DNA of 63,514 nucleotides, filler included, from Octopus bimaculoides (GCF_001194135.2; 6 parts of 6 records of this genome joined end to end with filler, not necessarily neighbours in it), one strand, 5' to 3'; counted from the whole stretch's first letter, positions 20,110 to 44,869 are shown. Made by a program: numbers and translations. Notes: a model not told the origin generated them from the letters alone.

Positions 20110-21775
20110 TTTCAAATATTTGAACAAAGCCAGCAATTTCGAGGGTGAAGGTAAGTTGATGACATCAAACCTAGAACGCAACTGGTACTTACTTTATCGA
20201 TACCGAAAGGATGAAGGGCAAAGTCGACATCGGCGAAATTTGAACTCAGAACGTAGAGACGGACGAAATTCTGCTAGGCATTTTGCCTGGAGTGCTAATG
20301 ATTTTGCCAGCTCACTGCCAAATAAGACAACAAAGATATTGGCTTCAAATTTTGGTACTAGGCTAGTTATTTCGGGGGAGAGAGGGTAAGTTGATTACAT
20401 CAACCCCAGGACTCAGCTGGTATTTATTTTATCGACTCCGAAAGGACGAAAAGCAAGGTCGGCAGCGGCCGAATTTGAACTCAAAAAGTGGAGACGGTCG
20501 AAATGCCGCTAAGACCTTTTCCCAGCGTGCTAACGATTCTGCCAGCACATCACCCTATGGGTCTATTAAAATATTACATGCAAATTTAATGCTATGGCGG
20601 TGGTGGGCTGGATCCCCGTCATTCAACGATGTAAACTTAGTGTTTCGACCAAATGTATTACCTACTCCTGAATTAACGTGTAAGTGGCCTCACATTCGCA
20701 GACACGAAGACACTTCCCAGGTAGAATCAGCATGATACAGTGTATGACATGACTATACTTTTTTATAGTTATAGGCTTCTATGCAGTTTCCATCTATCAA
20801 TTTTTCACTCACAATGTATAAATCAACCGGAAGTTATAAGAAATGGCATTTGCCCGAGACGCTACGTAGGGTGTAATCAAACATCGGACCTCGGAGTTGC
20901 GGAGCGAATTTCTTAGGATTCCACCAAGCTTTGCCCACTGGTTTCTTAGCCGTATGATTAAGAAACTGTTGGGCACTATATGGCCGAATCATGAAGAGGT
21001 TTCGTCATCAATGTCACATAGTCTGACCTTGAACATGTGTCATTTTCTATAGACCGGGGTCGACTTAAACCTTGTACTTGAAACTGAGTAGATGGAATGT
21101 GTATAGATACTCGTCGGATGGATTTCGCCCATAATTCAAAGTTCAAACCTTGTCAGATTGTTACGCTGATTTCCAGCAAAGAATTATATTAAGCGTACGC
21201 AGGTCTGTCTTACACTAGGCAGCTTACACGCTAAATTAATTAGCCTGGTTATTTAGTTGTTGGAACAGCTAAACACTTATGATTGTAAATCCTGACAAAA
21301 CTCGTTTAATATTATAATCTGAATTTCAGGCGGCGAGCTGACTGAATCGTTAACATGCCAACCATAATGCTTGACTGCATTTCGTCCGTCTTTACGTTCT
21401 GAGCTCAAATTCTGCCGTGATTGACCTTGCCTTTCACCATTGAGGGTGAGGTATCGATGAAATAAGTACCAGTTCAGCACTGGAGTCGATCTAATCAACT
21501 TAACCCCTCCTCCGAAACTGCTGCACTTGTGGTATAATTTAAAACCTATATTAAAATCCTTTCTATTATAGGCACAAGACCTGAAATTTTTGGGGAGGTG
21601 TATAGTCGATTACATCGAGCCCCAATGCTCTACTGGCACTTGCTTTATCGATCTCGAAAGGGATGGACGGCAAAGTCGACCTCGGCAGCATTTGAATTCA
21701 GAAAGTAAAGACGTACGAAATACTGCTGAGCATTTCGTCTTGCGTGCATACGATTCTGCCAGCTCTCCTAATGCT
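20110..21775. mobile_element. Cluster of at least four SINE family B copies plus other decayed SINE pieces
   Basis: Copies at ~20110-20310 (-), ~20350-20550 (-), ~21310-21545 (+) and ~21570-21775 (-). Confidence 0.8.
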
Positions 21776-22682
21776 GATCGAATCATAAAGCAATAACTAT
21801 TGTTTCTGATTTAGGCAAAGGGACTGGAATCTAGAAGAATTCGGTTAGTCGATACCATTGGCCGCTATATATGAAGCAAATTAATGGAGTCGTAAGAGTG
21901 ACGGTTAATAAGCCTGACCGCATTTCTCCCTGCTCTCTGGAGTTCAAATCCCACAGAAGCCTGTCTTTCTGACCCTACAATGTACCGTCCAATACAGAAG
22001 GCCGGTTCCCCATCATCTGTTGTTTCTCCTTCTTCACTCCTCTCTCTCTTTCTCTCTCCCTCCCTCCCTTCACTGCATAGAAAACCCACGAATGAAATAT
22101 TAAGTTGAGGCCCCACCAAACATCAATATGTGGCCGCGCTAAGAAATAAAGATTCTTTATTGTACATATATAAAAATATATTGGAATCTAATGTAGATGG
22201 AAGTTAAACTGCTATTTTGTTGTTAATCTGATACTATTATTTTCAATTACCAACGAAAATATTCAGTCAAATTAAATTAGATATTTGTAGTGCAAAACTT
22301 ATTGCCTTCAATTACGAAATCCCCAGTGAGAAACTGGCTGATCACGAAAGCTGAAAATAGCTTTCAAAACAAAAACTAACTCCTCTCTTTTCTCTTTCTC
22401 CTTCTTCCTCACTTACACTTTGTCCACATATATTTATCAGTTTCTCTCTTTCTCTCTCTCTCTCTCCTCACACACATAAATACATGTATATNNNNNNNNN
22501 NNNNNNNNNNNNNNNNNNNNNNNNNNNNNNNNNNNNNNNNNNNNNNNNNNNNNNNNNNNNNNNNNNNNNNNNNNNNNNNNNNNNNNNNNNNNNNNNNNNN
22601 NNNNNNNNNNNNNNNNNNNNNNNNNNNNNNNNNNNNNNNNNNNNNNNNNNNNNNNNNNNNNNNNNNNNNNNNNNNNNNNNNN

Positions 22683-22755
<73 letters not shown>

Positions 22756-23094
22756 AAGGGAGAGAGAGAGGGTGCGAGAGAAAAGAAAGAAGAATGGATA
22801 GAAAGAAAAATAGGAATAAAATATACAGTATAACATTCTAAGTAGGTTGATAATCAAATTAACAGAGATTTTTAAAGCACTCTCTATAACAATTAATAAT
22901 GCAATATCTCGCGATATCTGCATAAAAATCAAATTGTTTGTCTTCTGGTGGCTCCAACGAAGACATGGTGGCTCACGTAAACACACATACGTATAAAGTC
23001 AAACACGTATCTGTATGCGTGTGTGTATATGTGTGTATATGTGTGTATTTGTGTGTGTGTGTCTGTGTGTGTGTGTGTGTGTGTGTGCGTCTTT

Positions 23095-26821: not shown

Positions 26822-26854
<33 letters not shown>

Positions 26855-27439
26855 TATGAGAACCAAAAAATGGAATTCACAAGACTTTATTATTTATTAC
26901 AATCGTTTTGTCTTATTGTGCACTGGTGCTTTGTGAGTATGATGTGGTGCATCATAGGTCTGGATGTATCTTGTCAGGTGACTTGTCAGAAGGTACCACA
27001 TTTTTTAATCTCTGTTTGACTTATTTCAATTAGAATACGTTTTGGTAGTTGTTGTTTGCTACTCGTAAACATTAGAAACTTCAGTTATAATGAAGAACAC
27101 CTCTAGTACAAGTAATAAAGCAACTTACAATGAATAAAAGAATAAAATAAGTACGAAAAAAAAAAGTGAATCAAATAATATACTTTACACTGATAATGAA
27201 ACACAGTAAATAAAACCATTAAACAATCATGGATAGAATGAAAATCAAAACAGAGTCAGACATTCAAACTGATCATAGATGACTTTTGCATTTTCATGAA
27301 GCAAAAGTTCATACATCTGCTCAAGCATAGACACATAAAAACATTCACTTATTTGCATTTTCAGTTATATAGACACATCTATCGACTGGCCAATGTTTGT
27401 GTCTATCTCCCACCCTCCAGGCATTAAAGGTGTATTGTT

Positions 27440-27815
27440 TGCCATTTTTATCTCAGAGTTAATTTAGCAAAAACCAAAGTCATAGTTAGTAGGAAAGCTG
27501 ACAAGTCACAAATCCCTTCTGGTAGATGGCTCTGCTCGATATGTAGAAAAGGCAAAGGCACAGGTAGAGACTCCCTGTGCAAGTTATGGGCACATAAGAG
27601 GGGCAACAATATCAGAGGAAGGTTAACAAGGAAAATAGTCTTTGTGTGTGGCAGATGCACAGATACCGTAAACACTAGAAATATACAGAAAATAGCTTTT
27701 GCTATCTAGGTGACCAAGTCAGCAGTGGAGGGGGATACTCTGAGAGCATAGCTGCTGGAATAAGAATAGGTTGGGCAAAGTTCAAAGAACTTCTACCATT
27801 TTTGGCCTCAAGGAA
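27440..27815 (+). mobile_element. RTE-type LINE fragment with Zn-finger insertion in RT
   Basis: RVNLAKTKVIVSRK...GRWLCSICRKG...LWAHKR...FVCGRC...FCYLGDQVSSGGG...IRIGWAKFKELLP across frameshifts. Confidence 0.8.
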
Positions 27816-28239
27816 TAATCGAACCAATGAGTACAGCGACTAGGAAAAGAAAACGAATAGAACTTTTGCAAGTAGACTGAAAACAAAAAAAATATTTCGG
27901 TTTCTTCCCGGGGATTTGTAAAAAAAAAAAAAGGTGGGGAGAGGTGGTAGTAATAATAATAATAAATAAAAGAAAAATATTGACTTCAAACTCAAAAAGA
28001 GGAAGATGTAGTGAAATCCTAACGCCCCTGTAGGATAGCAAGTCAACTGTCCTAAACCGTATAAAGGTGCATGCAAATTGTAAGCGAGGGCCAGTGTGGT
28101 GTGTGAAGACAGTCATAGAGTCGTTGAGAAAAGATATTGTATGTTATGTGCTGTTTCTGATTTATATTTGTATTGTTGTAACCTTGTTATAAGTCCATGT
28201 TACAAAGTGGCAAATACAGTGAGTTCAGAGAAGGACATA

Positions 28240-29180
28240 AAAGTGTCGATGAGACACAACAGAGACATTAATAGAAAGTGGAGTACCTCAGGGAACTGTA
28301 TTGGGGCCACTGCTGTTCATGGTGGCTCTTTCAGACATGCCATCAGTTACACAGACAACCACACTTACTAGCTATGCCGACGACACAAAAGTAGTAGAAG
28401 CAATCAAGGAACCTTCTGATGCTAATATTCTATAGAGCGACTGAGATGCCATATATAAATGGGCTGAGGACAACATGCAATTTGATGCAGGCAAATTCAA
28501 AGCCCTCTGCTACCAGTTAATTGGTGCTCAGAAGTCACAACAATGATACTTTGGACCAAAAGGAGTGGAAATCTAAGAATCACATATGGTACGTGATCTT
28601 GGGATTGATATGAGCAACGATGCCTCATTTCACATGCATGTCACCAAGATAGTGGCAGTGTGCAGGTGAATGGCCAGATGGATTCTGAGAATCTTCAGAA
28701 TGAGGAACCAGGAAACTATATTGGTCCTATGGAGGACATTTGTCCTCAGCCATCTGGACTACTGCTCTCAACTGTGGTCACCTTACACTGTAGGATTAAC
28801 AGCAGAACTTGAGGCGGTTCAGCGACACAACATGAGGAAGATTGCATCAATGACACAGCTAAGCTACTGGAGTGAATATGGGAGAGGTATGCAATGATAA
28901 ATGTGTGTGGAAGATACTGGAGGGGCTGGCACCAAACTTTGGAATTGAGAGCTATACCAGACCTTGAATTGGACGTCACTGCATTATTCCAAAAGTCCCA
29001 GTTGTCTCAGTTAAGGTGAAGACCATGTACTGCAATAGCTTGGGATTCAAGGGCCCACAGCTATTTAACTCCTTGCCAAAACATCTTAGGGTTCTCTATG
29101 GAGTTGGGGTAGATGTTTGCAAGAAACAACTTGACCTCTTGCTATCCAAGATTTCAGATGAACCAACTTCCTTGGTCCTC
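28240..29180 (+). mobile_element. CR1/L2(jockey)-group LINE RT 3' fragment (in LPMO intron 2)
   Basis: SGVPQGTVLGPLLFMVALSDMP...SYADDTKV, RDLGIDMSND, FVLSHLDYCSQLWSPY...LEAVQR and KGPQLFNSLPK. Confidence 0.88.
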
Positions 29181-29384
29181 TTCCCAGTGCACTCTGCAGG
29201 TTAATAGAACATCACTGAGACAAGCGCAGAAGTTTAAGCATCTTTGTGCTGAATCCACGAGTGATGTAAAGCAAACGGCTGAATCAGAAGCTAGAAATTA
29301 CAGCTGCTGGCACAGTGATGTGCTAGCTCTAGCATTCACTTCTCAGAAGAGGTTAGCAAAAAAGCTAAACATGCTGTCTTGAAT

Positions 29385-29550
29385 TCATTTTACATGCCTA
29401 TCCTCACCTACAATCATGAATGCTGGGTAATGACCAAAAGAGTACAATCACGAATACAAGTGGCCGAAATGGGGATTCCTCCAAAGGATCTCTGCAGTAA
29501 TGTTACTCAACAGGGTGTGTAACTTGGAGATCTTGGAGTTTCTCCAGATT
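29385..29550 (+). mobile_element. Short RTE-type LINE fragment next to the LPMO exon-2 donor
   Basis: PILTYNHECWVMTKRVQSRIQVAEM resembles the RTE post-RT motif PxLTYGxExW...xQAAEM. Confidence 0.6.
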
Positions 29551-29631
29551 AAGCTGCTACCTTCCTGGTGAAATGATAACCGACAATGATCAAACACATA
29601 CATTCAAATATGGGAACATAAACACACATAC

Positions 29632-30010
29632 CTGTTCGATATTTCCATTGGAAAACACATTGTTCACAAACAAGTCCAAAAGGAAGTTTTATTGTAAAAT
29701 TAAAGAAGACATTGTTTTTCCCTTTTGTTACACGAAATCGGGAATTGAGTCCATCAGAGCTGTACAATAGGTGTTGATCCAAACAAGCCTGGGTTACTTC
29801 AGTTTCAGGGTTGTTAGTGGGACAAATTCGAAATTCAAACCAGCCTAAATGGTTTGCTGTCAGATGAACTGCTACTTTAATGTTATCTCCCTCTGTATAA
29901 CTCCGGGAAATTATTCCATTTGCATATTTGCCACCTGTTTCATGATGTCGCACACCGTGCCAAGGATCTCCACAAACACCACATTTTCCTTTATTATGCA
30001 TCCACTGCAC
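29632..30010 (-). CDS. AA15-family LPMO, coding exon 2
   Basis: Acceptor ttgtattttag| (AG at 30012-30011), phase 0, matching exon 1. 379 nt (126 codons + 1 nt): VQWMHNKGKCGVCGDPW...VHLTANHLGWFEFRICP...LPFGLVCEQCVFQWKYRT(G). Second copper His codon is 29851-29849 (His89 of the predicted mature chain, Ala87 two residues before). Donor ACAG|GTATGT at 29631, phase 1. Confidence 0.95.
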
Positions 30011-30094
30011 CTAAAATACAATTTCATAGCTTTAAACAAGATATTTATTGATTTATCAAACTGGGAAAATATTATTATATAATGCTACATACAA

Positions 30095-30208
30095 TCAAGG
30101 ATTTCTACAAATTCTACAGTTGCCTTCACTACACACCCATTGCATCAAAACCACAATTTGTATAGCTTCAAACAAGATATTTATTGAATTACTAATCTGG
30201 AAAATATT
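30095..30208 (-). pseudogene. Decayed tandem duplicate of the LPMO intron-1 3' end and exon-2 start (pseudo-exon)
   Basis: 30096-30208 aligns by eye to 29961-30073 (period ~135 nt). It translates MQWVCSEGNCRICRNP* versus VQWMHNKGKCGVCGDPW; the acceptor is tttg| instead of ttag|, and W has become TGA. Confidence 0.85.
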
Positions 30209-30609
30209 TTGAAATATGGTTGTGGCAGTGACTCCAAGTTTCTTGTCCTCATCCCAAGCAACAGCACAACACGTCTCTCCTTTCCTCACTCACAAAAGGT
30301 AAGATATGAAATCTTAGATTTAGCAGTTCTCATTATCAATTGAACTTATCCAATTCTATCCAACTCTTCTGAGTTTATATAGTTATACATGTGAATAACT
30401 TCTATATTAGCTTTGCTTCTTGTTTACATCATTGTAGTATATTTCTCTTGAGCTGAATCTTTAAGGTTTGTAGGTTTTGTTATCGCTTAACAGAAGAGGA
30501 AAGGGTTGTTACAATAAGAAACAATCCATTACACTATCAGGTTATCCTCAAATCCTCGTTGATCTAATTTTTTCAATGTCTGACAGGTACAGCAATAACA
30601 GCACAGAAC

Positions 30610-31655
30610 ACTGAAAGTATGCTCCGATGGTCGTGTAATGTGAGTGTGCATACTCGACAGAGTGTAAGTACCTTGAGAGAAAAGATGGACCTAAGATGCA
30701 TCAGTTGTGGTGTGCAAAAGAGATGACTGCACTGGTATGGTCATGTGGCGAGAATGGATGAGGATAGCTGTATGAAAAAGTGCCACATCCTAGCGGCTGA
30801 GGGGAACCTGTGGAAGACGTAGACCCAGGAAGACCTGAGATGAGGTGGTGAAGCACGACCTTCGAACGTTAGGCCTCACTGAGGCAATGACTAGTGACCG
30901 AGACCTTGGGAAATATGCTGTGCATGAGAAGACCCGGCAAGACAAGTGAGTCCATAATCCGTGGCCTTTGTTAGGGGTGTAGCCAGCCCACTTATGCATA
31001 CCTTTCCTTCCTTCACTGAACACTAAACTCTGCTTGCAAAGTCCTGTTGAGGCAAGTGAAATCGAAATCGAACCAAATTCGACGGATGGTAGCCATGCTA
31101 ACCTTTCCTTTATTGGACACTAAACTCTGCTTGCAAAAACCTGTTGGGGCAAGTGAAATCGAAATTGTAATTGAACCAAATTCAATGACTAGCACCTGTG
31201 CCAGTGGAGCGCTAACAGCACCATCCGAGCATGATCATTGCCAGAGCAGCTGTCTGGCTTCCATGCCGGTGGCACATAAATAGCACCATTTGAGCGTGAT
31301 CATTACCAGCGTCACCTTACTGGCACTTGTGCTGGTGGCATGTGAAAAAACATTCGAGCGAGGTTGTTGCCAGTGCCGTTGGACAGGCTCCTGTGCAGGT
31401 GGCACGTAAAAAGCACCATCTGAGTGTGACCGTTGCCAGTACTGCCTGACTGGCCTTCGTGCCGGTGGCACATAAAAGCATCCACTACACTCTTGGAGTG
31501 GTTGGTGTTAGGAAGGGCATCCAGCTGTAGAAACTCTGCCAGATCAGATTGGAGCCTGGTACAGCCATCCAGTTCACCAGTCCTCAGTCAAATCATCCAA
31601 CCCATGCCAGCATGGAAAGCAGACGTTAAACGATGATGATGATGATGATGATGAC
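30610..31655 (+). mobile_element. 5'-truncated RTE-type LINE 3' end with long 3' UTR and (GAT)n tail (LPMO intron 1)
   Basis: SMLRWSCNVSVHTRQSVSTLREK...LHWYGHVARMDEDSCMKK...GRRRPRKT*DEVVKHDL. The 3' UTR has a ~97-bp internal duplication (31020-31185) and ends aaacgatgatgatgatgatgatgatga. Confidence 0.85.
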
Positions 31656-32191
31656 ACACACACACAAAATTAATATAAACAGCAGTTTGCAATGTTTCAC
31701 CAGAAAGGCGAATTATAATTGTCACTAGATGTGACTAGGGTGTTAGGAAACACCAACATTGCTAGAAATAAGAGCTAAACCACTCTAATGCTGTAGTTAA
31801 AACACGAATGAAAACATACACTAACAGGGACCATAATTGTCTGAAAAGTGCCAATCAAGAATTCCTAATACTGACATCAATTTCAGCAATTTCTGTTGCC
31901 TCATCAGGATATGTCTAAGGAATTCTAGATATATATATTATCCGAAATGTATAGTATTAAATATCCCTCATGGCTGGTCTTACCAATTAGTTTTGCATGG
32001 CCAGAATGAGTGTGACATAAAATATGATAAATTTGTATTCAGTTTCTCTCTCCCAAATATCACTCACACAGTAGGAGTCAACTCAAAGCTATAGAAAATA
32101 ACATTTGCCCGAGATGTCCCAAACCTGGTACCACCTTGTGATTGGAAATAAATGAACTTCATAAGCATCCAGCCATATTGCACCTACTATA

Positions 32192-32222
<31 letters not shown>

Positions 32223-33724
32223 TCCAGTGTAAAATTATGAAATTAATGAAAGTCTGAATGAATGTACAATGGGCTTTTATATGTGCTTTATTAAGACAAT
32301 TCTATTCACAAGGTGTCAGTCAACTCAAGGCTACAATAGATGACACTTGATGAAAGTATTGTGACTGTGTCTGAATAGATAAAAAAAAATGTCAGGATGT
32401 TCATAGCTTGAATGTCCTTAAATCATGGGTCTTCTTGGTGAAAACTGGTCCACATGCTAAAACCAATAACAGCAGCAGCAGCAACAACAACAACAACCTT
32501 CATTTGAGGTTTTTATAGGTCCTTTTTCTTCGTTAACCTCATAATCTCTAGCCATTTAATTTTCTTAATGAATTTTCAACATAGAAGTTGTCATCAACAA
32601 TATAACAACAGTCCACAGATAGTCACTGGCTGAAAAATTCCACTTAACATCATTAAAGTTTATAGAGTGTGTCAAACCTATTTTTCACACCTGAATGAAG
32701 CAAAGAGCTAATACCTGGTTGAACTTGTTTTACTCTGCATTGTAAATAAATTCTATTTCAAACAGGCGAGTCATTGTGAATATAACTGTAATGTGATTTT
32801 CTTGTCACTACTCTAGCAAGTAGGATCACGTTAAAGTCTAACTAAAGAGATTAAAGTGATATAACGACCAAAACATATATAGAGCTGTCTTCTGTAGTGT
32901 TTAAAATGAGTACAATAATAGACATTTTTCATTTTCACAAAATGAAACTGGAAATATCAACATTATTCTTTAGATTCCAATGTTTTCCATAATGGAGAAT
33001 ATAATTCTGCAAAAGATAAAGAAAAGTTGCGAAGTTTTTAATCCCACCCTGCTTTCTCAAAAAAGATAAATAAAGTTTCGTTTTTAACATTTTCTGAAAA
33101 TATTTTTGGTTTGAGATGGATTGGGAGATTCTACATTTAATAATTCTGAGATTAAACTGTGAAATAAAAAAGATTGTTTTCGAAATTTCCATGTTAAATG
33201 CTTAATTTTTCCACTTTCAATTTGTGATCATAAACCAAAAGAATGCTTTTGGTGATATTGGTCTACTTGATCAAGATTGTCCTGAGACTATGAACTACAA
33301 GAGTTTATAGAGCCTATAAAAGAATCTCTACATGGTCACTTAACTTGCTAGAAACAACTACAAAATCACACTCAACTCACATCTTGCTGTTTTTTTTTCT
33401 TTTCTTTTTGATAACAAAACAGGATGATCATGACAGAAATACGTTGAGTGATTGGTTTGGGTCTTCAGAGTAAACATGGAGTTCAATAGTCTTTACAGCA
33501 ATAGATTTTCTACTGTTTTAGTATCAGGATCAAACTAAACAAAGTGGGCCTCTGTATGACCTGTATGTGCACACTTCACCTGCTAGAAATAGCAGCAAAA
33601 TATCCCTCTACTGACACCCTAGTTAAATAAGAAAAGGACACATGAAAATAGTGACTCTCAAACGTTTTTGACTTTATGTTACTCTAGGGATCAGAATAAT
33701 TAGTGTACATTGCATAAAAAAAAT

Positions 33725-33920
33725 AAAGGTGCAAGTATGGCTGAGTGATTAAGAAGTTTGCTTTGTAACCATGTGGTTTTGGGTTCAGTCCCACTGTGCA
33801 GTACTTTTGGTAAGTGTCCTCAACTATAACTCCTGGCTAACCAGTACTTTGTGAGCAAAATTGTTAGAAGCTCTGCGGAAGCCTGTTTTGTGTGTATATG
33901 TGTGTGTGTGTGTGTATATT
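33725..33920 (+). mobile_element. SINE family A 5' part
   Basis: ggctgagtgattaagaagtttgct...gggttcagtcccactgtgcagtacttttggtaagtgtc, then core and (TG)n. Confidence 0.7.
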
Positions 33921-33944
33921 ATCAAATGTCCAGAAGTTCCCTAC

Positions 33945-34540
33945 AGGTTGTAGTTGGTTTCTGTTACCTAGATCACCTGATTAATAATGGAAGAGGATGT
34001 TCTGAATGTATAGTAGCTAGGATAAGAATAGGATGCTAAAAATTCACAGCTAGGGTTAGGGTTAGTTCACAACAAAAATTTACTGTCTCTCTTACTCTCT
34101 CTGAGAGTGCACTAAGGCAGATTATATGATGCTTGTGTTCAAACAGCTCTGATACATAATAATGAGACATGGATCCTGAATACAGAAAACATGCAAAGAC
34201 TAGAGAGGAATGAAGCAGCTAGTATGTTCCACTGGATGTGTTATGTCAGTGTGCATGTACAACAAAGTACAAATGTGTTAAGAGAAAAAAACTGGAATAA
34301 GAAGAATCAGATGTTGTACGAAATCGAGAAGACTGCAATGGTAACTTGATGCATAAAGATGAGGACAGTTGCATAAAGTGCCAATCACTTAAAGTGAATG
34401 GAACTAGTGGAAGAAGGAGACCAGGATGATGTGGAATGAAGTGGTGAGAGCTGATCCTAACATATTGAGCCGCACAGAAGACAAGCGACTGGGATGCCTG
34501 GCAATATAAGGTTTTCAAGAAGACTCATCCACTTTAGTAA
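33945..34540 (+). mobile_element. RTE-type LINE fragment, same family as 27440 and 30610 (LPMO intron 1)
   Basis: LQVVVGFCYLDHLINNGRGCSECIVARIRIG, LYDACVQTALIHNNETW and MFHWMCYVSVHVQQSTNVLREK. Confidence 0.75.
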
Positions 34541-34719
34541 AACTGAGTTCTGGAAATACTTTGATTATTGTACTCTCCACAAACAAGTTACATTAATTCA
34601 CCCCACCCCCACCCCCTCTCACTGAGCCAAACTACCTCTGGATAATGTAGTCTTATATATACAAAAAGACAGGATGATTAAAGCTGTAATATCTTGAATA
34701 ATTTCATTCTAATTTTGGC

Positions 34720-34970
34720 ATAGGGCCAGTAATTTCGTTTCCATAATTAGCACAAAAAACTACATCAATACACCAAATTTGAAATCAATTGGAACAAAGA
34801 ATTGAAAAGTGTGAGTCAAACAAAAAAAATCCATTGATATCATAACAGTTGACTGGCACTTTATTTTATTGGCCCCGGAACGATGAAAGTTAAAATTAAC
34901 CCCGGCGAGATTTGAGCTAAAAACGTAAGGAATTAGAATACATTCTGTCCGACGTTCTAATGATTCTACC
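34720..34970 (-). mobile_element. SINE family B ~100 nt into LPMO intron 1
   Basis: gttgactggcactttattttattggccccggaacgatgaaag...gatttgagct matches family B. Confidence 0.65.
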
Positions 34971-35064
34971 AAGAAGAGAAAATGATGCAAGAAAGCTGTT
35001 AATAAAGAAAAAACAAGTATTTTTAAAGATTCTTAATTCATATGAATATAAATATTTAACTTAC

Positions 35065-35241
35065 CATTTTCCCACCACAATATAATTCGTTGTCATTATA
35101 ATTAACAGGGTTTGGAAAACCGAACCGCCACATACTGTTTCTTGCTGGTGGGTCCATCAATCTTCCATGGGGCAAAACTTGATGAATAGATGTTGTGACA
35201 ATCAAAACCACGAAAATTGAAGATATACTTTCTGGGTTCAT
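35065..35241 (-). CDS. AA15-family lytic polysaccharide monooxygenase (LPMO_10 / chitin-binding type-4), coding exon 1
   Basis: Translates MNPESISSIFVVLIVTTSIHQVLP-HGRLMDPPARNSMWRFGFPNPVNYNDNELYCGGKM: a hydrophobic leader, then the AA15 N-terminal H-G-x-L-x-x-P-x-x-R-x-S-x-W-R and NELxCGG motifs. His1 codon is 35169-35167. Ends at a canonical donor ATG|GTAAGT (GT at 35064-35063), phase 0. Confidence 0.93.
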
Positions 35242-35291: not shown

Positions 35292-35321
35292 GACTGACAA
35301 GATGTAATTCTTTTTTAAATA
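35292..35321 (-). promoter_or_regulatory. Candidate core promoter of the LPMO gene (TATA-like + Inr)
   Basis: Minus strand reads TATTTAAA (35321-35314), then TCAGTC (35297-35292), an invertebrate Inr-like motif. The putative +1 A at 35295 is 54 nt upstream of the ATG. Spacing of -26 is slightly short. Confidence 0.4.
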
Positions 35322-37091
35322 TGTTATGCTCGGATAATGTCAGATTATGTTGTTTCTTTCATAAAGAGGAAAAGAATAAACAAACACCAGTATGAAAAGA
35401 TATCCAGGTTTGCTGTCAGTAAAATATCAAATTTGCCACTGATACACTGGCCATAAAAGCCGTAGACATTTGATAAATGATTTCAAATATTCTTTTTCAG
35501 ATTCTGCTTTTTCCTTTATTCCTGTCTCATTTTCAAACTTTGAAAATTCACCGATTAATCAAATGATGTAAGGCTTGCAATTATTCAGTCTGTTTTCTGT
35601 TTCAGTCCTAAATAACACTGATTTGAGTGAGGGGATGGAAAAAATTGAATAGTTAAAATAAAAAGATATATATATATATATATACATNNNNNNNNNNNNN
35701 NNNNNNNNNNNNNNNNNNNNNNNNNNNNNNNNNNNNNNNNNNNNNNNNNNNNNNNNNNNNNNNNNNNNNNNNNNNNNNNNNNNNNNNNNNNNNNNNNNNN
35801 NNNNNNNNNTATATACGTGTGTGTGTGTCTTTTAAATAAAATTACACCAGCAACTTTTTCCTGTGGCTGTTTTTTGTTATTGCAAGGTTAAATTTCACAC
35901 AATACTTCTTCATACTTTCCTTGAAAATTCCTCTTACCAATAATTCGAATGTTTCTTTGGGTAATCATAACAGCACCAAATGTATCTGCAACCAGATTTT
36001 TATACACAGGAAACAACATTCCAATTTTATAATTATTTCTTTATCTTATATACTTGGCGACAGTGATTGTTCCTGTATTAACCTGAGAAAATATTACCTG
36101 GAGCTATGCTATTAGATATTGTTCACCGACAGTTTGAAAAAAAAAATGGTTACTTGAATAACTTTTAACTTGTTTTTATTGTTTTTTTATATTCCCTCTT
36201 TTGTTCTTAATTTCTTTTTTTCAAATTTTCTTTCAGTGTTTCTCTGAAATGTATTTATCAATTCTAGCAATACGCCTTTTTGGTATGAGCTACTGTTAAC
36301 AATTTTTTGTATTTTGTTTCTGTTGTATAGGAAAACAGAAACACAATGACTTCTTTCTAAAACAAACACACAAGTAAGAATGCGCTTGCATTTGCCTGGG
36401 AAACACTTCATATAAAGAAAAGCCGGCTTATTTGTATTTGGTTGGGTTTGGGCTGCTAAGAGCCTACAAAGTAAATATTTCCTTTCCGCCAACTTTGATT
36501 TTCCAACTCTTTCCACAAACCCATTCTCCCTAATGACTCTATCGTCTTTCTTTCACTTTATTATCCTACCCAACTCTCTTGCATTTCTTTAGTTCTCACT
36601 TATCCCAAATTCTCTGTTGTCACTTCCCGCTCGTCGTGTAAATACGACTAGCCGTGACAAACCCTGTCCTTATTTCACTGCTGCCAAGCATGTTGTTGGT
36701 TCAGGAACGAAAGCTATGCACATAGAGACGGCGGACAGGTGAATGAGTGTTTCTAATTCCGAACGGTTGTTTGAGAAGAAGAAGAATACTAAACGATGAA
36801 ATTGGTTGCAAGGTAAGAAAGAAATAAGCGAAATAAGAGGACTATATGCCTAAAGGTTCGTCAGGAAATAAAATTACAGACAGCTAATAAAAAGATATGG
36901 ATGATGAGGAAGTAAGAAATAGTGACTAAAAACAAGGTAGATATATTGAATGACACAAAGAAAGCAAACTTGATAATGTAGAAGCAAGGAGAGAAAGTAC
37001 AAGAAAAAGTGACTAAACGTAATCACAGGAGAGCAAAAGAAAAGGAGAAAAGAGAGGGAAAATGTAGGAAATGAGAGAGAGAGAACGATAT

Positions 37092-37333
37092 GTGTTATGT
37101 ATTCTTTTGTTCTTTGTGGGATAATAAACAACTCACTGAAGGCATTGTTATGTTGCTACGTGTTTACTTTATTTTACATGTTTACAAACAGTGTCTATAG
37201 CGGAGTGATACACGCTGTGCGTATCTGCCTTAAACACAGTTCATACTGCTTAGTAGATGCGCTTAACGAAATAGTGAAGATGTATTCATATATACGTATA
37301 CCTATGCATGCACATAGATATGAACATATAACA
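37092..37333 (+). repeat. Direct repeat copy 1 (242 bp)
   Basis: Near-identical to 46534-46785, from gtgttatgtattcttttgttcttt to catatatacgtatacctatgcatgcacataga.atgaacatataaca. Confidence 0.9.
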
Positions 37334-38929
37334 ATATGTATGCGTGTTTGGCGCATACAGATACAAATAATCTATTTTGTGGAACTCTAATGATAAGACA
37401 AGAGATACAAATAATCTCTTTTGTGGAACTCTAATGATAATTGGAACAACAACGATTTCGTATTTCAAAAATAATTCAGAAAGAATATACTTGTGGAAGT
37501 TTCCATTAGCTTTCTGAGACTCATAGAAGAATCTGGCTTCAAAACAAGTTCCTGACCTATGGTTTGCGATCCAACTCCACTGACACACATTCATCCATTC
37601 CCGACATTCCATCCAGTCGACGATGTTATTTGTATATGATTCTATAGCAACTAATTGAAAGGGTCTTCGAGCTAGGATTTGTAAGGCATCGCAAAATTTC
37701 AATGCAAATGTTAATTTGTCGGGATTTTTTTTCATGAAGTATTTTGTAACGATTTTTAACGTTTTTTTTTTAAAATTTACTTCTCAAAAAGTAGCAGTTT
37801 CTTACGATTTTCTTTATGCTACGGTGTGTAGATAATAAGTATCATAGAACTGTTTTGCTAAATTAAAAAAAAACAAAAACAAACAAACAAAAACAACCCA
37901 AAACTTCGATCTTTAAAGGTTCTTAACTTTATCATTTCTCCTCAAAACGGTTGTAGGTTTCGTAATTGGCTTGAAAAGCAAGAAATATGTTGCAATTCTC
38001 AATATAGTCAGGAAACGAATCATCAGACGGATGATATTAGTCTAAAGTGCTTGGTAGTGGAATTATTAACCACATAGCCATCCTTTAATCTATGCAAAAG
38101 AAGACCAAAGGCACAAAAAATGAAATGTAAAAAAAATATATATACTAATGGAATATTCCCATGAAAATATCATTTCAGTTTCCCTAACACAACAAATGTT
38201 ATTCTTTGAAAGAAGCAGAGACGACAGTTGTGTAGAGCTGTGATGAAAGGAATTATTAAGCAAACATTAATTTTTATGAATGGATCTTGCGGTTGTTTCG
38301 TGAATTGAGGGCGTCAGTTGTTCGATCACTCATCTTATTTTAGTATAAGTGGTCGAATGTTCCATATACACCTGTCCCGTTGATTCAGACAGAATCAGTG
38401 CAACACTGTGCGCGACAAAGCTGAAGCTCATGAATCACAAGTGTAGTCCATGTGATAGGATTCCCCTCAATCTCCGTCTACTCAGTTTTCATTCACAAGG
38501 TTTGGGTTGGCCTGAGTCTATAAGAGAAAACAGCTGATGTGCTATACTTTGAGATTGAACTCATAGAATTGTGACTGAGAAGATAATTTCTTAAACATTC
38601 GTAGATACTTGTAATTGTTGTTTAGCCCCATATCAGCTTCGATGGGGCAACCTCTTTCATCAAAAGCATTCCACCCACTATCATTTAATCACTTTAAGAG
38701 TTTCCAGGACCACTGCTTTATCTAATGAGTGGTTCTCAGTCATTTTCATTTCGTTGTATAACTGGAGATTATTCAAAGAGTTTCTACAGTAATTCACATG
38801 GAAATTAAAAACAACTGGCGCATTTTGTTTGATGCACTTCGCACGAAATCTTGAAAGAAACTCTGCTTAAGAGTTAAAAAGAGAAAAAAGAAAACTATTG
38901 CTTACCTTATCTTATTAATCATAATAGAT

Positions 38930-39299: not shown

Positions 39300-41636
39300 T
39301 TTACCTACTTCCTGGTCGAACCTTATATAACCGATTGAAAGGTTCACTTCTGCCTCTTTCAACCAAGTAACTGGGAGCATATCTCTTTGGTTTTCAGCAT
39401 CGACTGAATGGAAAGAGACAACACAATTCTTACCATTTCTTGTTGTTCATTGGATTCAGGTTCCTTAGCAACATTACTATCGAATGCCTATTCAAGGTCA
39501 GTATATGAGGTTCGTTCCCCAGAAAGCGTCAGTGAATTTAAAAAACTCCACTGGATAATGTATAACAGCTTCGATATTTTCTTCAACAATGGTGTCAATG
39601 CTTCTGCAGATTGTTACCTCACCGGGCAATAATGACATTATGTCAGTGTTTATATGAAAACAATTTTTGTTCTTAGGTGTCAAAATGATTGTCGATGACA
39701 CTCTTTCAACTGCCTCTTCATTGTCTAAGTAATAATTCTTCTCCCCAAACTTCTCTAACAATATTATTTGTAGATACCATGTTTTGGGGAATTTCTATGA
39801 AGTATTCTTCCAACCCTTCATCATTGGAAAAGGTTCCATTTCCAACCTCTAAGAGGTACCCTTTGAGTCATCTTGTCTAGCCATGCGCATATTTTCTGTC
39901 AAACTGAATTTTGTTACAAAATGCTAGAGATGAGATTGCTTAATTGAGGATTCAATTACTGCTGCATTGGATCCTCTTGAGATGACAGGTGCAGTTTGTC
40001 TGAAGTCTCCACCAAGTAGCATCAATTTTCTCCAGAATGGTGTGAGCGAATTCATTATTTGCCTCAGCAGCAGATCAATGGCTCCCAGAGCATTGCATGA
40101 TAACATTGAAGCTTCATCAATAATTAAAAGATGAACCTGATTTAATTTTTCAGATAACTCTGAAGGGATTCTCATGTGAGAGGTGGAACTATCATGCAAT
40201 GGGACGGGTAGCTTGAGTCCACTGTGAATTGTCCTTCCATCAATGAGCAAACCAGCAGCTGTGCCTGTAGTAGCATAGGAAAGGACACACTTGTTCTGCC
40301 TTCTTAGAGAAGCTATCAATGTGTTGTAGAGGTATGTCTTTTCCGTACCTCCAGGGGCATCGAGGAAAAAGAATCTGCTCTGTCTTTCTTCGTCAACACA
40401 AATATGAGGGGCTAAGAATGCTCAGACTGATCGCAGGGACTTCATTGTTTCTTGGGTAAACCTTGAAATCTCAGTTGAATGGTGGCTCACCGTTAGTATT
40501 GCTGAAGACCATAGCTATTTAATAAACTTTAAAAAATAAATAAATAAAATGCGCCCTTTTAAAGCCTAGCCAGGCTCATGGGACCGGTTTCCCGGTTTCA
40601 ATGGCGTATGTGTTCCCCGGCTGGACGGGACGCCAGTCCATCGCAGCGTTACTCATTTTTGCCAGTTGAGTGAACTGGAGCAACGTGAAATGAAGTGTTT
40701 TGCTCAAGAACACAATGCGTCGCCCAGTCCAGGAATCGAAACCACAATCTTACGATCATGATGCTGACACCTTAACCACTAAGCCACGCGCCTCCACATT
40801 TAATAAACTGTTGATAAATTGTATTTCTATCTATCAGCATTGCGATCCCTGTTCAAGACTAAATTTACAACAGACATAGGTCACCGTTCCTGTTGGGCAT
40901 GCTGCTCCTCACGCAGTCCTACTTCTCGTAATGTCCTGTAAGATGCAGCGTAGACATTGTTCTCTCTGATAATATCCAATCTGTGCATCACCTCAGGTAT
41001 ACATATTTCATTTGTTGCATTCTGAGCCCACACTGCGGTGGCTTGAACGCTGTCAACAACATACAATTGCATAAATTGCCTCTGTTAGCCCTCCAGAATG
41101 CGTGTGTGAAGTCCTGTGATAAACTTGGCCGTGCACTCTGAAGCAGAATGGACCTCGTCCTTGCGGGTCATCGATGTGAGCTCCCATAGATGCGAAAGAT
41201 GAGCAGAGTTGCACGATCTTATGTTTTCTTTGAAGTTAACAAAATGTGGATGTTGAGGGTCTGACAACAGAGATCGTGAGTATGGAGGAAATTCTCTTTT
41301 AACTGGGGGCAGGACTTCCCCTTTATGGCAGCTACTGTTAAAGCATCCGTCTGATGGTCACTCTGAAGCAAAATGCTTGGCTCTACAAAACTGACACAAT
41401 GTGTTCACGTCAACACAGTTATGAACTTGCACATTCTCTTCATTATAAGTATGATTATTTACTAAATTTACATAATTTCCAACTCTTCGCACAATTCTCA
41501 TGGCGTTCGCATTCCGTTGCCTTCGATTATTTCTTCGTTCTTCTGTTTTAGTATTAATTAATTCTTCCATTCTCCTCCTCATTTGCTCTCTGTGAACATT
41601 TGCTTCTTCTTCAGTTTCATTTTCTAATCTTAGTCC

Positions 41637-41724
<88 letters not shown>

Positions 41725-41800
41725 GATCCTCTCTGCTGCCTGCTCTTCCGTTTCATCTTGTCGCCTTTGCGATGCTCTCATCCTTAGATTTGCGAGTACG
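39300..41800 (-). mobile_element. Helitron relic: N-terminal domain fused to PIF1-like helicase, Rep/HUH domain deleted
   Basis: N-terminal pieces MRASQRRQDETEEQAAER, CQFCRAKHF..E...CHKGEVLPP, FKENIRSCNS, QFMQLYVVD and VFSNTNGEPPF. Helicase motifs FFFLDAPGGT(E)KTY, ATTGTAAGLLIDGRTIHSGLKLP, LLIIDEASM, GGDFRQTAPV, LTENMR and ILTPKN. Many stops. Confidence 0.92.
40529..40797 (-). mobile_element. Full-length tRNA-derived SINE (family C) inserted in the Helitron, with 12-bp TSD
   Basis: Minus strand has A box TGGCTTAGTGG, B box GTTTCGATTCC, core GCTCCAGTTCACTCAACTGG...CTGCGATGGACTGGCGTCCCGTCCAG and a (TTTA)n tail. ATTTAATAAACT flanks it at 40517-40528 and 40798-40809. Confidence 0.9.
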
Positions 41801-43490
41801 CAAAGTATTCAAAGTTTTAGTTAGACTGATAATTTATGGAACGAAATCGAAGAGGTAACTTACTATAGAAACCGCACTTGTGGTAGTCATGCTATAAAGC
41901 TGTCGGCAGTCCATCATGAATATTAAACATGAAAGTTACGCAATCTCTGAAGATTTTATAATGCAATCGGCTTATACGATTTTCTTTATAAAATTGATAT
42001 CTTTCATTACTAATGAACTGTACGTAAAATAATGTAACTAAATGTCTTATGAACAAACTCTCCTCTTTTGCTTTGTTTTCTATTTGTATCTCAGTTGGAC
42101 AAGTGCTGTATTCGTTCACTGAAACCGTAAGTTCAAGTCCAACCATATGCATTTTCTTCTGGTATGAAATTTACTAAAACATTTCCAGTACTGTAGCGAA
42201 ATACTATTATAAATTGGTCATTCCATTGCTTATTTACTTCTTCGCGTAAATGTAAGAATAAGAGATGGCAGCTTTCAAAGTAAAAGAAGTGTCAAGGATA
42301 TAACGAATAACATAATTTTCAAAGGTTTTCTTCTATGACTACAGTCAGTACAACCCTTACAGATTTTACATCTCAAGCATCAAACACATCAGAAAAAAAA
42401 AATACAATTTCAATATAGATTATGTATTTGTTGGTTCTCTTTAAAGTTTTTATAATCATACAACATAACCGTGAAGTTTCCATGAGTCCTGCTAGTAAAT
42501 ATTAATAAATATTGTATACATTTTCATCTGTTGGTGTTATTGTTTATACCTAGATCAGACCTGATCGAGATGTAAACCCAATCCAGATTGATTTAGAGAA
42601 GTTTTGGTTGTTTTTTTTTTTCTATGTAAAGCGCCGGCTCTATTTCACAAAACCATCATTGATGACATCTTCTCAGCGAGCTAATGAAAAAATCTATGTG
42701 GTTGTATGACTTGCTGGAAGTAGCGACCAAATTTTTTCTTCAAACACACCTTACTTACTTGAGCTCTTCGTTCCCTATGACTTTTCTTCGCTATTCTTGA
42801 CTCTGGGCTGTCTTTTCTGTTTCCTATAATGACCCAACAAGAGAGCTCTACGTGATCGATCCATCTGGTGGAAATAGCAACCCAATTTTCCTCAAATTAC
42901 ATCCTGATGCTATAGAAAAAAAGAGAGGTTACACTAAATTAGTTCTATGTGCATTGAAGCCATCATCTAAAATAGGATGGTTAGGGTTACCCTTGATCAA
43001 GGTTGACTAATGGTTATAAAGCGACAATACTCATATTACCACAGCAGCATGCATGTGATACCAACGCTCTCGCTTTTTTTTTTTTTTACTATTATTATGA
43101 CAACTTAGCCAAATAAAGACTTCATATCAATTCTTTTCCTCAATTAGCATCTCACACTTAAATAAAAAGTTTACTTCGTACAAATAAATCAGTTAAAAAA
43201 AAACAAAAACCAAAAGTTATTTCGTTAAAAATAGGTTTCAAATAAATGGTTTCTGATTATTTTAGTTGCATTGGTTTATTTCANNNNNNNNNNNNNNNNN
43301 NNNNNNNNNNNNNNNNNNNNNNNNNNNNNNNNNNNNNNNNNNNNNNNNNNNNNNNNNNNNNNNNNNNNNNNNNNNNNNNNNNNNNNNNNNNNTTTTAATC
43401 AATATAAGACAACAAAAGGTCTGAAATAAAAACCCAGCAAAATTTCTCATTACTTTCTCAGGAATTTTCATTAACAATCGATGTGTATAA

Positions 43491-44490: not shown

Positions 44491-44869
44491 TGGAACATTT
44501 ACAATCTCCTGTGAGTATTTTAAAATTTTCTCCAAAATAAGTTTAGAAACTTACATATCTACAACTTTCTCTGGACGAACACACAAACGGCCATCTTTAA
44601 AAACTATAAGAGACTATAATATCTACAACTTCTGTGAATATCTATCTTTTCCTCTCTCCCTGAATATTCGAAAATGTAAACATACTTTTTATTGTAAGAA
44701 CAGTACAGTTTTCTATGTTTTAAAACCTTAATATCTACAATTTTCTGTGAAAACTTTACACTTCTTTTCTTTCCTTTTCCTTCCTTTCTCCCTGAGTATT
44801 CGAAAATGTGAACATAATGTCCTTTTTATTGCAAGAACACTACAATAATCTACATGCATTTGGGTCATC

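What the first reader, a model, noticed from the sequence alone, without database searches (positions are those of the whole stretch)
29632..35241. Secreted AA15 copper LPMO gene in a probable cephalopod
Seen: two phase-compatible exons encode a signal peptide and an intact-looking His-brace set (His1; His89 with Ala87 in T-A-N-H) plus the family Cys pattern (CGG, CGxCGD, FRIC, CxxC-xxQW). Established: AA15 LPMOs oxidatively cleave chitin or cellulose and occur in arthropods, molluscs and oomycetes. Inference: in an octopus-like host this would be a chitin-remodelling enzyme (beak, radula, gut or sucker cuticle) or one digesting crustacean prey. Mollusc AA15s are much less characterised than insect ones.
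Basis: partly seen in the sequence, partly recalled or inferred. Interest (0 to 1): 0.75.

Follow-up and report, generated by a model that had tools for sequence, protein, structure and literature searches.

The report
Octopod AA15 copper LPMO gene, 5' part
The window holds the first two exons of a real, well-conserved gene for a secreted copper enzyme of the AA15 family, which oxidatively cuts chitin or cellulose, in what is very probably an octopus-type genome; the family is already known in molluscs and the rest of the gene lies beyond the edge of the sequence.

Summary
On the minus strand, exon 1 (35241..35065) and exon 2 (30010..29632) join in phase through canonical GT/AG sites into 185 codons. 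These codons match Pfam LPMO_10 (E 3e-17) and the AA15 crystal structure TdAA15A (5MSZ; E 2e-44, 46% identity, model TM 0.94). His1, Ala87/His89 (T-A-N-H), seven conserved Cys and all 45 family-conserved columns are intact.

The gene is incomplete here. Exon 2 ends in phase 1, and the exon encoding the last ~40 residues of the domain is absent from the remaining 2.8 kb. That exon carries the axial Tyr/Phe and three more Cys.

An octopod host is supported. The piece shares non-coding repeats with Octopus sinensis and Argonauta loci, but none with two snail loci.

The closest relatives are not the two annotated octopus AA15 genes (52-58%). They are long gastropod proteins of 837-1437 aa (up to 72%), built as AA15 plus disordered linkers plus two 6-Cys modules. 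That architecture resembles insect LPMO15-1. Haliotis has the same three-exon structure with one large last exon.

One oddity: Pro sits at -1 of the predicted signal-peptide cleavage site (0 of 89 homologues).

Verdict: a new member of a known family, of modest interest.

The parts
35065..35241 (-). Exon 1, coding part: ATG, 24-residue signal-peptide-like leader, then mature residues 1-35 (HGRLMDPPARNSMWRFGFPNPVNYNDNELYCGGKM). Phase 0 at its 3' end.
   Evidence: Sequence read; translation. tblastn identity of 82-91% to gastropod orthologues over the mature part. The intron position matches O. sinensis, Candidula and Haliotis genes.
35170..35241 (-). Signal-peptide-like leader MNPESISSIFVVLIVTTSIHQVLP. 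The Pro codon CCC at 35172..35170 sits at -1 of the expected cleavage site.
   Evidence: The -1 residue in 89 homologues is G 70, S 8, A 8, C 2, Q 1 and P 0. No signal-peptide predictor was available, so cleavage is inferred.
35167..35169 (-). Codon CAT for His25, which is His1 of the mature enzyme (first ligand of the copper histidine brace).
   Evidence: Aligns with His1 of TdAA15A. The column is 97% His in 106 homologues.
30011..35064 (-). Intron 1 (5054 nt), GTAAGT...tattttAG. Contains a G+C-richer repeat block at 30708-31654.
   Evidence: The repeat block matches O. sinensis and Argonauta loci at 71-92%.
29632..30010 (-). Exon 2: mature residues 36-161 plus the first base of the next codon (phase 1). 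Encodes CGVCGD, T-A-N-H, FRIC and CEQCVFQWKYRT.
   Evidence: The exon boundaries match those in O. sinensis LOC115215838 and LOC115222289 and in the Haliotis asinina orthologue.
29849..29860 (-). Codons ACA GCA AAC CAT = Thr86-Ala87-Asn88-His89. His89 is the second copper ligand and Ala87 is the AA10/AA15-type alanine.
   Evidence: His89 aligns with His91 of TdAA15A and Ala87 with Ala89. The roles of these residues are described in PMC5823890.
26822..29631 (-). Start of intron 2 (donor GTATGT at 29631..29626), running to the edge of the piece. No third exon is present.
   Evidence: Three-frame translation, motif search and tblastn with 120 short and 9 long homologues found nothing resembling GNxWG...CxGCGxQExFYxCAD or a 6-Cys module.
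35293..35321 (-). Possible core promoter: TATTTAAA (35321..35314) about 26 nt upstream of TCAGT (35297..35293), roughly 55 nt before the ATG.
   Evidence: Read by eye in A+T-rich DNA. Weak and not tested statistically.

Best explanation
These are the first two of probably three exons of a functional gene for a secreted, copper-dependent lytic polysaccharide monooxygenase of CAZy family AA15, in an octopod genome.

How it most likely works:
- The leader targets the protein to the secretory pathway.
- Signal peptidase cuts before His25, so that the free amino group and side chain of His1 bind one copper together with His89 (the histidine brace). Ala87 sits beside the metal.
- Reduced Cu(I) activates O2 or H2O2 and oxidises a glycosidic carbon, C1 in the characterised AA15s. 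This breaks chains on the surface of crystalline chitin and opens it to chitinases.

By phylogeny and gene structure this copy is the cephalopod counterpart of a gastropod orthogroup of long modular proteins: AA15 domain, disordered linker, 6-Cys module, linker, C-terminal 6-Cys module. This is the same domain logic as insect group I LPMO15-1, which is needed for cuticle chitin turnover. The missing last exon is therefore expected to be large. It should encode the end of the catalytic domain (three Cys and the axial Tyr/Phe) followed by such an extension. The most likely role is remodelling of the animal's own chitinous matrices rather than bulk digestion.

Shown: exon structure, family membership of the part present, conservation, and host affinity.
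Inferred: cleavage site, copper binding, chitin as substrate, C-terminal architecture, and physiological role.
For: - Canonical splice sites and a phase-compatible join.
- Pfam LPMO_10, E 3.1e-17, profile positions 1-170 of 183.
- TdAA15A (5MSZ), E 1.7e-44, aligned 1-161 to 1-162 of 201.
- AlphaFold model pLDDT 90.5; Foldseek against 5MSZ gives TM 0.94, rmsd 1.5 A, 46% identity.
- All 45 columns conserved at 85% or more across 120 homologues are kept.
- 86 of 93 columns invariant in six gastropod orthologues are kept, and the seven changes are mild or seen elsewhere in the family.
- The closest relatives in an exhaustive HMMER scan are Haliotis, Patella, Biomphalaria, Lymnaea, Elysia and Plakobranchus proteins of 837-1437 aa, at 58-67% identity (72% over the mature domain for Haliotis).
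- Those proteins carry two 6-Cys modules, matching the insect LPMO15-1 motif described in PMC9156745.
- In NJ trees the window pairs with Candidula in 94 of 100 bootstrap replicates, and is sister to the gastropod long clade at 54% (107-108 of 200). It sits apart from both annotated O. sinensis paralogues.
- Intron positions and phases are identical in O. sinensis, Candidula and Haliotis. In Haliotis the third exon is a single terminal exon of about 1.95 kb.
- Octopod host: repeat sharing as, with negative controls.
Against: - The third exon is not in the piece. The axial residue, three Cys, the stop codon and any C-terminal modules are therefore unseen.
- Pro at -1 of the cleavage site is unique among 89 homologues and could shift or impair cleavage. 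That would abolish the histidine brace.
- No identical or close (>72%) protein or transcript-derived ORF was found in any database searched, so there is no evidence of expression.
- Bootstrap support for the grouping with the gastropod long clade is only 54%.
- Substrate and role are by analogy only.
Confidence: 0.7

Rival explanations
1. It is a short, single-domain digestive AA15. This is the reader's second option: a catalytic domain of about 200 aa only, secreted into the gut or saliva to attack the chitin of crustacean prey, like the Thermobia gut AA15s or the insect group III midgut enzymes.
For: - Many mollusc AA15 proteins are short, at 210-330 aa.
- The part seen here is only the catalytic domain.
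- Octopods eat crustaceans (general knowledge).
Against: - Its nearest relatives by identity and tree position are all long modular proteins.
- The Haliotis orthologue, which has the same exon structure, has a 650-codon last exon.
- In shipworms the endogenous AA15s are barely expressed in digestive tissues (PMC8561940).
- In insects the modular group I enzymes are integument-expressed rather than gut-expressed (PMC9156745).
Confidence: 0.15
2. It is a dead or dying copy: a 5' gene fragment or young pseudogene that no longer makes an active enzyme. It would have either lost its 3' exon or have a leader that can no longer be cut to expose His1.
For: - No exon 3 within 2.8 kb downstream.
- Pro at -1, never seen in 89 homologues.
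- No orthologue among the annotated octopod proteins seen in the searches (O. sinensis, Argonauta hians; O. bimaculoides is in the database) and no matching transcript ORFs.
- TE relics fill the introns.
Against: - Both exons are open and the splice sites are consensus.
- 45 of 45 family-conserved and 86 of 93 clade-invariant residues are retained after more than 500 My of separation from gastropods. This requires long purifying selection, and any decay would have to be very recent.
- Intron 1 is 5 kb here and 7.8 kb in Haliotis, so an intron 2 longer than 2.8 kb is unremarkable.
- To my knowledge Pro at -1 is rare but tolerated by signal peptidases (recalled, not tested here).
Confidence: 0.12
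3. The piece is not cephalopod. It would be gastropod (or other mollusc) DNA, because the best protein hits are all gastropod.
For: The top hits are Haliotis, Patella, Candidula, Lymnaea and Biomphalaria.
Against: - Non-coding DNA of the piece matches O. sinensis loci about 20 times, up to 93% over 252 bp and 72% over 721 bp. It matches an Argonauta locus five times.
- Candidula and Haliotis loci match only in coding exons.
- The Helitron helicase relic has its best named hits in two Octopus species.
- Identity to gastropod orthologues (58-72%) is at the level expected between classes, not within one.
Confidence: 0.03

Closest known systems
TdAA15A of Thermobia domestica (PDB 5MSZ), founding characterised member of CAZy AA15 (Sabbadin et al. 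2018, PMC5823890)
   Same: - 46% identity over the 161 residues present.
- Same fold in the model (TM 0.94, rmsd 1.5 A).
- His1, His89 (His91 in Td) and Ala87 (Ala89 in Td) align.
- The seven Cys present align with seven of the ten conserved Cys.
   Different: - TdAA15A is a bare catalytic domain from an insect gut.
- Here the last ~40 residues, including the Tyr184 equivalent, are unseen.
- Relatives of the window gene carry very long C-terminal extensions.
- The window has Thr86 where Td has Gln88 (Thr is the family consensus).
Gastropod long AA15 proteins: Haliotis asinina XP_067653661 (837 aa), Patella, Biomphalaria glabrata LOC106065474 (1205 aa), Lymnaea, Elysia, Plakobranchus, and the truncated Candidula model
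   Same: - Highest identity: 58-67%, and 72% over the mature domain with Haliotis.
- Sister position in the tree.
- Identical intron positions and phases.
- Shared clade signatures such as PARNSMWR-GF-NPVNYNDNELYCGG-M/V-QW and QWKYRTG.
   Different: - All of these are gastropod. No cephalopod member was seen in the databases searched.
- The window shows only the first 185 codons, so the linkers and two 6-Cys modules are predicted, not observed.
- The window alone has Pro at -1.
Insect group I LPMO15-1 (TcLPMO15-1, LmLPMO15-1; Qu et al. 2022, PMC9156745)
   Same: - AA15 catalytic domain at 55-61% identity to likely group I insect proteins such as Venturia.
- The window's closest orthologues share the defining architecture of an AA15 domain followed by two C-x(13-15)-C-x3-C-x(5-9)-C-x4-C-x-C repeats.
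   Different: - Insect proteins are about 340 aa with a tail of about 120 aa, whereas the mollusc ones have linkers of hundreds of residues.
- Orthology to group I is not resolved by the trees.
- Octopods do not moult an exoskeleton, so any role in chitin turnover would be in other structures.
Annotated Octopus sinensis AA15 genes LOC115215838 (295 aa) and LOC115222289 (313 aa; Argonauta orthologue 314 aa)
   Same: Same family, same three-exon structure and intron phases, signal peptide and His1. LOC115215838 has one C-terminal 6-Cys module.
   Different: Only 52-58% identical. They fall in other branches of the tree, so they are paralogues, not this gene.

Membership tests
CAZy AA15 / Pfam PF03067 (LPMO_10) | Significant match to the family profile above the curated threshold | tested here: met
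   64.3 bits against a gathering score of 23, E 3.1e-17, profile positions 1-170 of 183.
CAZy AA15 / Pfam PF03067 (LPMO_10) | Closer to characterised AA15 than to AA10 or other LPMO families | tested here: met
   The only PDB sequence hit is 5MSZ (TdAA15A), E 1.7e-44. Foldseek gives TM 0.94 for 5MSZ against 0.54 or less, at 15-19% identity, for AA10 structures.
CAZy AA15 / Pfam PF03067 (LPMO_10) | Histidine as the first residue of the mature protein, directly after a cleavable signal peptide | tested here: inconclusive
   His25 aligns with His1 and follows a hydrophobic leader. The -1 residue is Pro, found in 0 of 89 homologues. No signal-peptide predictor or protein data were available.
CAZy AA15 / Pfam PF03067 (LPMO_10) | Second copper-ligand histidine, with the AA10/AA15-type alanine two residues before it | tested here: met
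   T-A-N-H at mature residues 86-89. His89 aligns with His91 and Ala87 with Ala89 of TdAA15A.
CAZy AA15 / Pfam PF03067 (LPMO_10) | Axial aromatic residue (Tyr184 in TdAA15A; F/Y in QExF/YxCAD) | not testable with these tools
   This residue is encoded by the next exon, which is absent from the piece. It is present in all close orthologues as QEEFYNCADV.
CAZy AA15 / Pfam PF03067 (LPMO_10) | Ten conserved cysteines (five disulfides) | tested here: inconclusive
   Seven of the ten are present at the aligned positions. The other three belong to the missing exon.
CAZy AA15 / Pfam PF03067 (LPMO_10) | Copper binding and oxidative cleavage of chitin or cellulose | not testable with these tools
   This needs a biochemical assay.
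Mollusc long modular AA15 orthogroup (Haliotis/Patella/Biomphalaria type) | Catalytic domain groups with this clade rather than with other mollusc AA15 paralogues | tested here: met
   Highest identities, 58-72%. NJ: paired with Candidula in 94 of 100 replicates, and sister to the whole gastropod clade at only 54% bootstrap.
Mollusc long modular AA15 orthogroup (Haliotis/Patella/Biomphalaria type) | Three-exon structure with introns after CGGxM (phase 0) and within the Gly codon of YRTG (phase 1) | tested here: met
   Same positions in Haliotis L006 and Candidula L002; Candidula has two extra introns inside exon 2. These positions are also shared with the octopus paralogues, so they are not specific to this clade.
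Mollusc long modular AA15 orthogroup / insect LPMO15-1-like architecture | C-terminal extension with two 6-Cys repeats | not testable with these tools
   No such module exists anywhere in the piece; it would lie beyond the edge. It is present in the gastropod orthologues and defined for insects in PMC9156745.

The most novel reading that the evidence does not exclude
Octopods keep a third, so far unannotated AA15 lineage. It would be the counterpart of the gastropod giant-linker proteins and, in architecture, of insect LPMO15-1. On this reading it serves periodic turnover of the animal's own chitinous linings (sucker cuticle, oesophagus or crop lining, radula or beak growth zone). That would extend LPMO-assisted 'moulting' chemistry from arthropods to molluscs. 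The unique Pro at -1 might additionally mean non-standard N-terminal processing.
Probability: 0.25. Interest if true: 0.55.

Novelty: new member of a known kind. Interest (0 to 1): 0.3.

Why it matters
AA15 enzymes are the only LPMOs made by animals, and only a few insect members have been characterised. No paper in the searched library characterises a mollusc or cephalopod AA15.

This gene shows that an octopod carries, besides the two annotated paralogues, a strongly conserved copy of a lineage that in gastropods encodes very long modular proteins with an LPMO15-1-like layout. That gives a concrete candidate for how cephalopods remodel chitin in the beak, radula, sucker lining or gut cuticle. 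It also flags gene models to repair: the Candidula model is truncated, and no cephalopod model was seen.

It does not change what is known about the family's chemistry or distribution.

Tried and rejected
- Third exon inside the piece. I looked in 26822..29631 (minus strand) by three-frame translation, by motif regexes (CAD[IV], QE.F/Y, G[NS][ST]W, CG.QE), and by tblastn at E<=10 with 120 homologues and later 9 long orthologues. Nothing was found.
- Tandem paralogue elsewhere in the piece. Weak tblastn hits at 36367-37618 turned out to be low-complexity chance matches.
- Exact look-ups of the exon-1 and exon-2 ORF products in public assemblies. None is on record.
- The word-indexed protein search, run twice, returned only proteins of 377 aa or less and missed the closest relatives. 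The exhaustive representative scan found them. Absence of hits is therefore weak evidence.
Twenty long ORFs were scanned instead, and only the PIF1 helicase relic matched.
- Gastropod origin or contamination was considered and rejected on repeat sharing.
- AA10, viral fusolin or bacterial origin was rejected on structure and sequence distances and on the spliceosomal introns.
- A literature check of the -1 proline rule failed because the search term was not accepted.
Full report
**1. What is in the sequence**

The finding lies on the minus strand.
- Exon 1 starts with the ATG at 35241 and ends at 35065 (177 nt, 59 codons, phase 0). It is followed by a consensus donor, GTAAGT.
- Exon 2 starts at 30010 behind ...tgtattttAG and ends at 29632 in front of GTATGT. 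It is 379 nt long, so it leaves one base (G) of the next codon.
- The joined product is 185 aa: MNPESISSIFVVLIVTTSIHQVLP / HGRLMDPPARNSMWRFGFPNPVNYNDNELYCGGKM / VQWMHNKGKCGVCGD ... LTANH ... FEFRIC ... CEQCVFQWKYRT.
- Counting from His25 as residue 1, Ala87 and His89 sit in T-A-N-H. Cys occupy positions 31, 45, 48, 98, 111, 150 and 153.

**2. Is it more than chance, and what family is it**

- Pfam LPMO_10 (PF03067) matches with 64.3 bits (cut-off 23), E 3.1e-17, covering profile positions 1-170 of 183.
- Against all PDB sequences, the single significant hit is the AA15 enzyme TdAA15A (5MSZ). E is 1.7e-44, and residues 1-161 align with 1-162 of 201.
- An AlphaFold2 model of the 161 mature residues has mean pLDDT 90.5. 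It superposes on 5MSZ with TM 0.94, rmsd 1.5 A and 46% identity. AA10 structures follow far behind, at TM 0.54 or less.
- In an alignment with 120 homologues, all 45 columns that are at least 85% conserved carry the consensus residue in the window protein. These include His1, His89, G-x-F after it, CGxCGD and the C..C..QW block.
- Sabbadin et al. (PMC5823890) describe His1, His91, Ala89 and Tyr184, ten conserved Cys and five disulfides for AA15. The first three residues and seven of the ten Cys are present here.

**3. The gene is cut by the edge of the piece**

- TdAA15A continues for about 40 residues beyond the end of exon 2. In relatives that stretch reads GN(S/T)WG...CxGCGxQExF/YxCAD(I/V). 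It holds the axial aromatic residue and three Cys.
- Nothing like it exists in the 2.8 kb between exon 2 and the edge at 26822, or anywhere else in the piece.
- The piece begins with a (TA)17 microsatellite, which is typical of a contig end.
- Intron 1 is 5.05 kb, so an intron 2 longer than 2.8 kb is unremarkable.

**4. Host**

- Non-coding parts of the piece match two O. sinensis AA15 loci (L003 and L004, 52 kb in all) about 20 times at 69-93% nucleotide identity. Examples are 40550-40800 at 93% over 252 bp and 30708-31417 at 72% over 721 bp.
- The piece matches an Argonauta hians locus five times.
- Loci of the snails Candidula and Haliotis match only in the coding exons.
- A Helitron PIF1-helicase relic at 39924..40319 (Pfam E 7.8e-30) has its best named hits in O. 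bimaculoides (66%) and O. sinensis (60%).
- The host is therefore very probably an octopod. The species cannot be named with these tools.

**5. Which AA15**

- The word-indexed searches gave Candidula (65%), Lingula (60%) and O. sinensis LOC115215838 (58%) as best hits. They returned only proteins of 377 aa or less.
- The exhaustive HMMER scan of 1.84 billion representatives revealed closer, much longer relatives. One search identified them as Haliotis asinina and H. rubra (837 and 845 aa), Patella (962 and 969 aa), Lottia (partial), Biomphalaria (1205 aa), Lymnaea (1323 aa), Elysia (1437 aa) and Plakobranchus (1387 aa).
- These proteins consist of, in order:
  - a signal peptide;
  - the AA15 domain, ending ...QWKYRTGNTWDKD..FC.GCGPQEEFYNCADV.I;
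  - hundreds of residues of K/R/S/T/P/Q-rich linker;
  - a 6-Cys module (C..LGGGMD.WCT.NCNANFCP...C.C);
  - another long linker;
  - a second 6-Cys module at the very C-terminus.
- The Candidula model is simply truncated. The GNTWDKDETGRFCVGCGPQEEFYNCADVTI exon and both 6-Cys modules lie unannotated downstream in L002.
- In NJ trees the window pairs with Candidula in 94 of 100 bootstrap replicates. With the long proteins added, it is sister to the whole gastropod clade, which is the position a cephalopod orthologue should take, but with only 54% support. Both annotated octopus paralogues fall elsewhere.
- Of 93 columns invariant in six gastropod orthologues, the window keeps 86.
- The Haliotis gene has the same two introns. 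Its third exon is one terminal exon of about 1.95 kb encoding residues 189-837.
- The two O. sinensis paralogues also share the intron positions and phases.
- No cephalopod member of this lineage appeared in any search.
- No identical ORF product is on record in public assemblies.

**6. How it most likely works**

Established for the family (PMC5823890, PMC9156745):
- after signal-peptide removal, His1 and the second His hold one copper in a T-shaped brace;
- reduced copper with O2 or H2O2 oxidises the polysaccharide chain and cleaves crystalline chitin (or cellulose), helping hydrolases.

Insect AA15 groups differ in role:
- Group I LPMO15-1, defined by an AA15 domain plus two 6-Cys repeats (C-x15-C-x3-C-x6-9-C-x4-C-x-C), is expressed in cuticle-forming tissue and is needed for cuticle chitin turnover at the moult.
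- Gut forms are bare catalytic domains.

The window's closest orthologues carry exactly two such repeats. I therefore infer two things. The complete octopod protein is probably a long modular AA15. Its more likely role is remodelling of endogenous chitinous matrices rather than prey digestion. Both points are inference, because neither the C-terminal part nor any expression data could be seen.

**7. An oddity**

- The residue before His1 is Pro (codon CCC, 35172..35170).
- In 89 homologues with a leader, the -1 residue is G (70), S (8), A (8), C (2) or Q (1), and never P. The six gastropod orthologues have A or G.
- LPMO chemistry needs His as the exact N-terminus, so a shifted cleavage would inactivate the enzyme. 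One alternative is cleavage after Ser18, which fits the -3/-1 rule.
- From memory, Pro at -1 is rare but tolerated by signal peptidases. GCC (Ala) to CCC is a single base change, so a polymorphism or a base-call error in this draft assembly is also possible. The assembly has N gaps at 35688-35809 and 43284-43392.
- This point, together with the missing exon and the lack of transcripts, is what keeps the pseudogene rival alive at about 12%.

**8. Comparison and novelty**

- AA15 genes in molluscs have been known since 2018 (PMC5823890). Octopus genomes already carry two annotated 'uncharacterized' AA15 genes.
- No paper in the library characterises a mollusc or cephalopod AA15. In shipworms the endogenous AA15s are barely expressed in digestive tissues (PMC8561940).
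- This is a new member of a known family. The added points are that it represents a third, unannotated octopod lineage and that its orthologues are unusually long modular proteins.
- A specialist would not be surprised. Interest is modest, at 0.3.

**9. Verdict**

Noticed in passing
window 39924-41756 (minus strand): Helitron relic. A PIF1-like helicase fragment sits at 39924..40319 (Pfam PF05970, E 7.8e-30), with best named hits in O. bimaculoides (66%) and O. sinensis (60%). An upstream ORF at 41358..41756 has an (RE)n run that is simply a translated (TC)40 microsatellite at 41640-41720.
   Followed up: partly
window 40550-40800: A 252-bp element is 93% identical to a stretch in intron 2 of O. 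sinensis LOC115222289 (L004 16691-16942). It is the closest DNA match found between the piece and any octopus locus. The element type was not determined.
   Followed up: partly
window 30708-31654 (inside intron 1): A repeat block richer in G+C (about 47% against about 35%) matches several places just upstream of O. sinensis LOC115215838 (L003) at 71-82%, and an Argonauta locus (L005) at 73-92%. It looks like an octopod-wide interspersed repeat.
   Followed up: partly
window 28600-29520 (+) and 44808-45023 (+): Broken ORFs that look by eye like LINE reverse-transcriptase tails (e.g. ...LFADDAAL..., ...YNHECWVMTKR...). Pfam gave no significant hit, so this rests on inspection only.
   Followed up: partly
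window 35688-35809 and 43284-43392; 26822-26857: Two assembly gaps (122 and 109 N). The first lies only about 450 bp upstream of the AA15 start codon. The piece begins with (TA)17, a likely contig end. The source is a draft assembly.
   Followed up: no
L002 (Candidula unifasciata CAJHNH020001824.1) 19322-19411, ~21746-21871, ~22739-22873: The deposited 184-aa Candidula gene model is truncated. The exon encoding GNTWDKDETGRFCVGCGPQEEFYNCADVTI and two 6-Cys modules lie unannotated downstream.
   Followed up: yes
window 35170-35172: Pro (CCC) at position -1 of the expected signal-peptide cleavage site before His1. 0 of 89 homologues have Pro there.
   Followed up: partly
L001 (Logan SRR26493809 contig, 2704 bp) 388-768: A contig of unknown organism carries an exon with the same boundaries as window exon 2 (64% aa identity). 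The database protein P0061 was called by reading through two stop codons, so it is an ORF-calling artefact and not a real 232-aa protein.
   Followed up: partly
tool behaviour (versus 56): The word-indexed protein search listed only proteins of 377 aa or less. It missed the 837-1437 aa gastropod proteins that share 14-residue exact words with the query. The exhaustive representative scan found them.
   Followed up: yes
window 35293-35321 (minus strand): TATTTAAA lies about 26 nt upstream of a TCAGT initiator-like motif, roughly 55 nt before the ATG. It is a plausible core promoter in A+T-rich DNA but was not tested.
   Followed up: no
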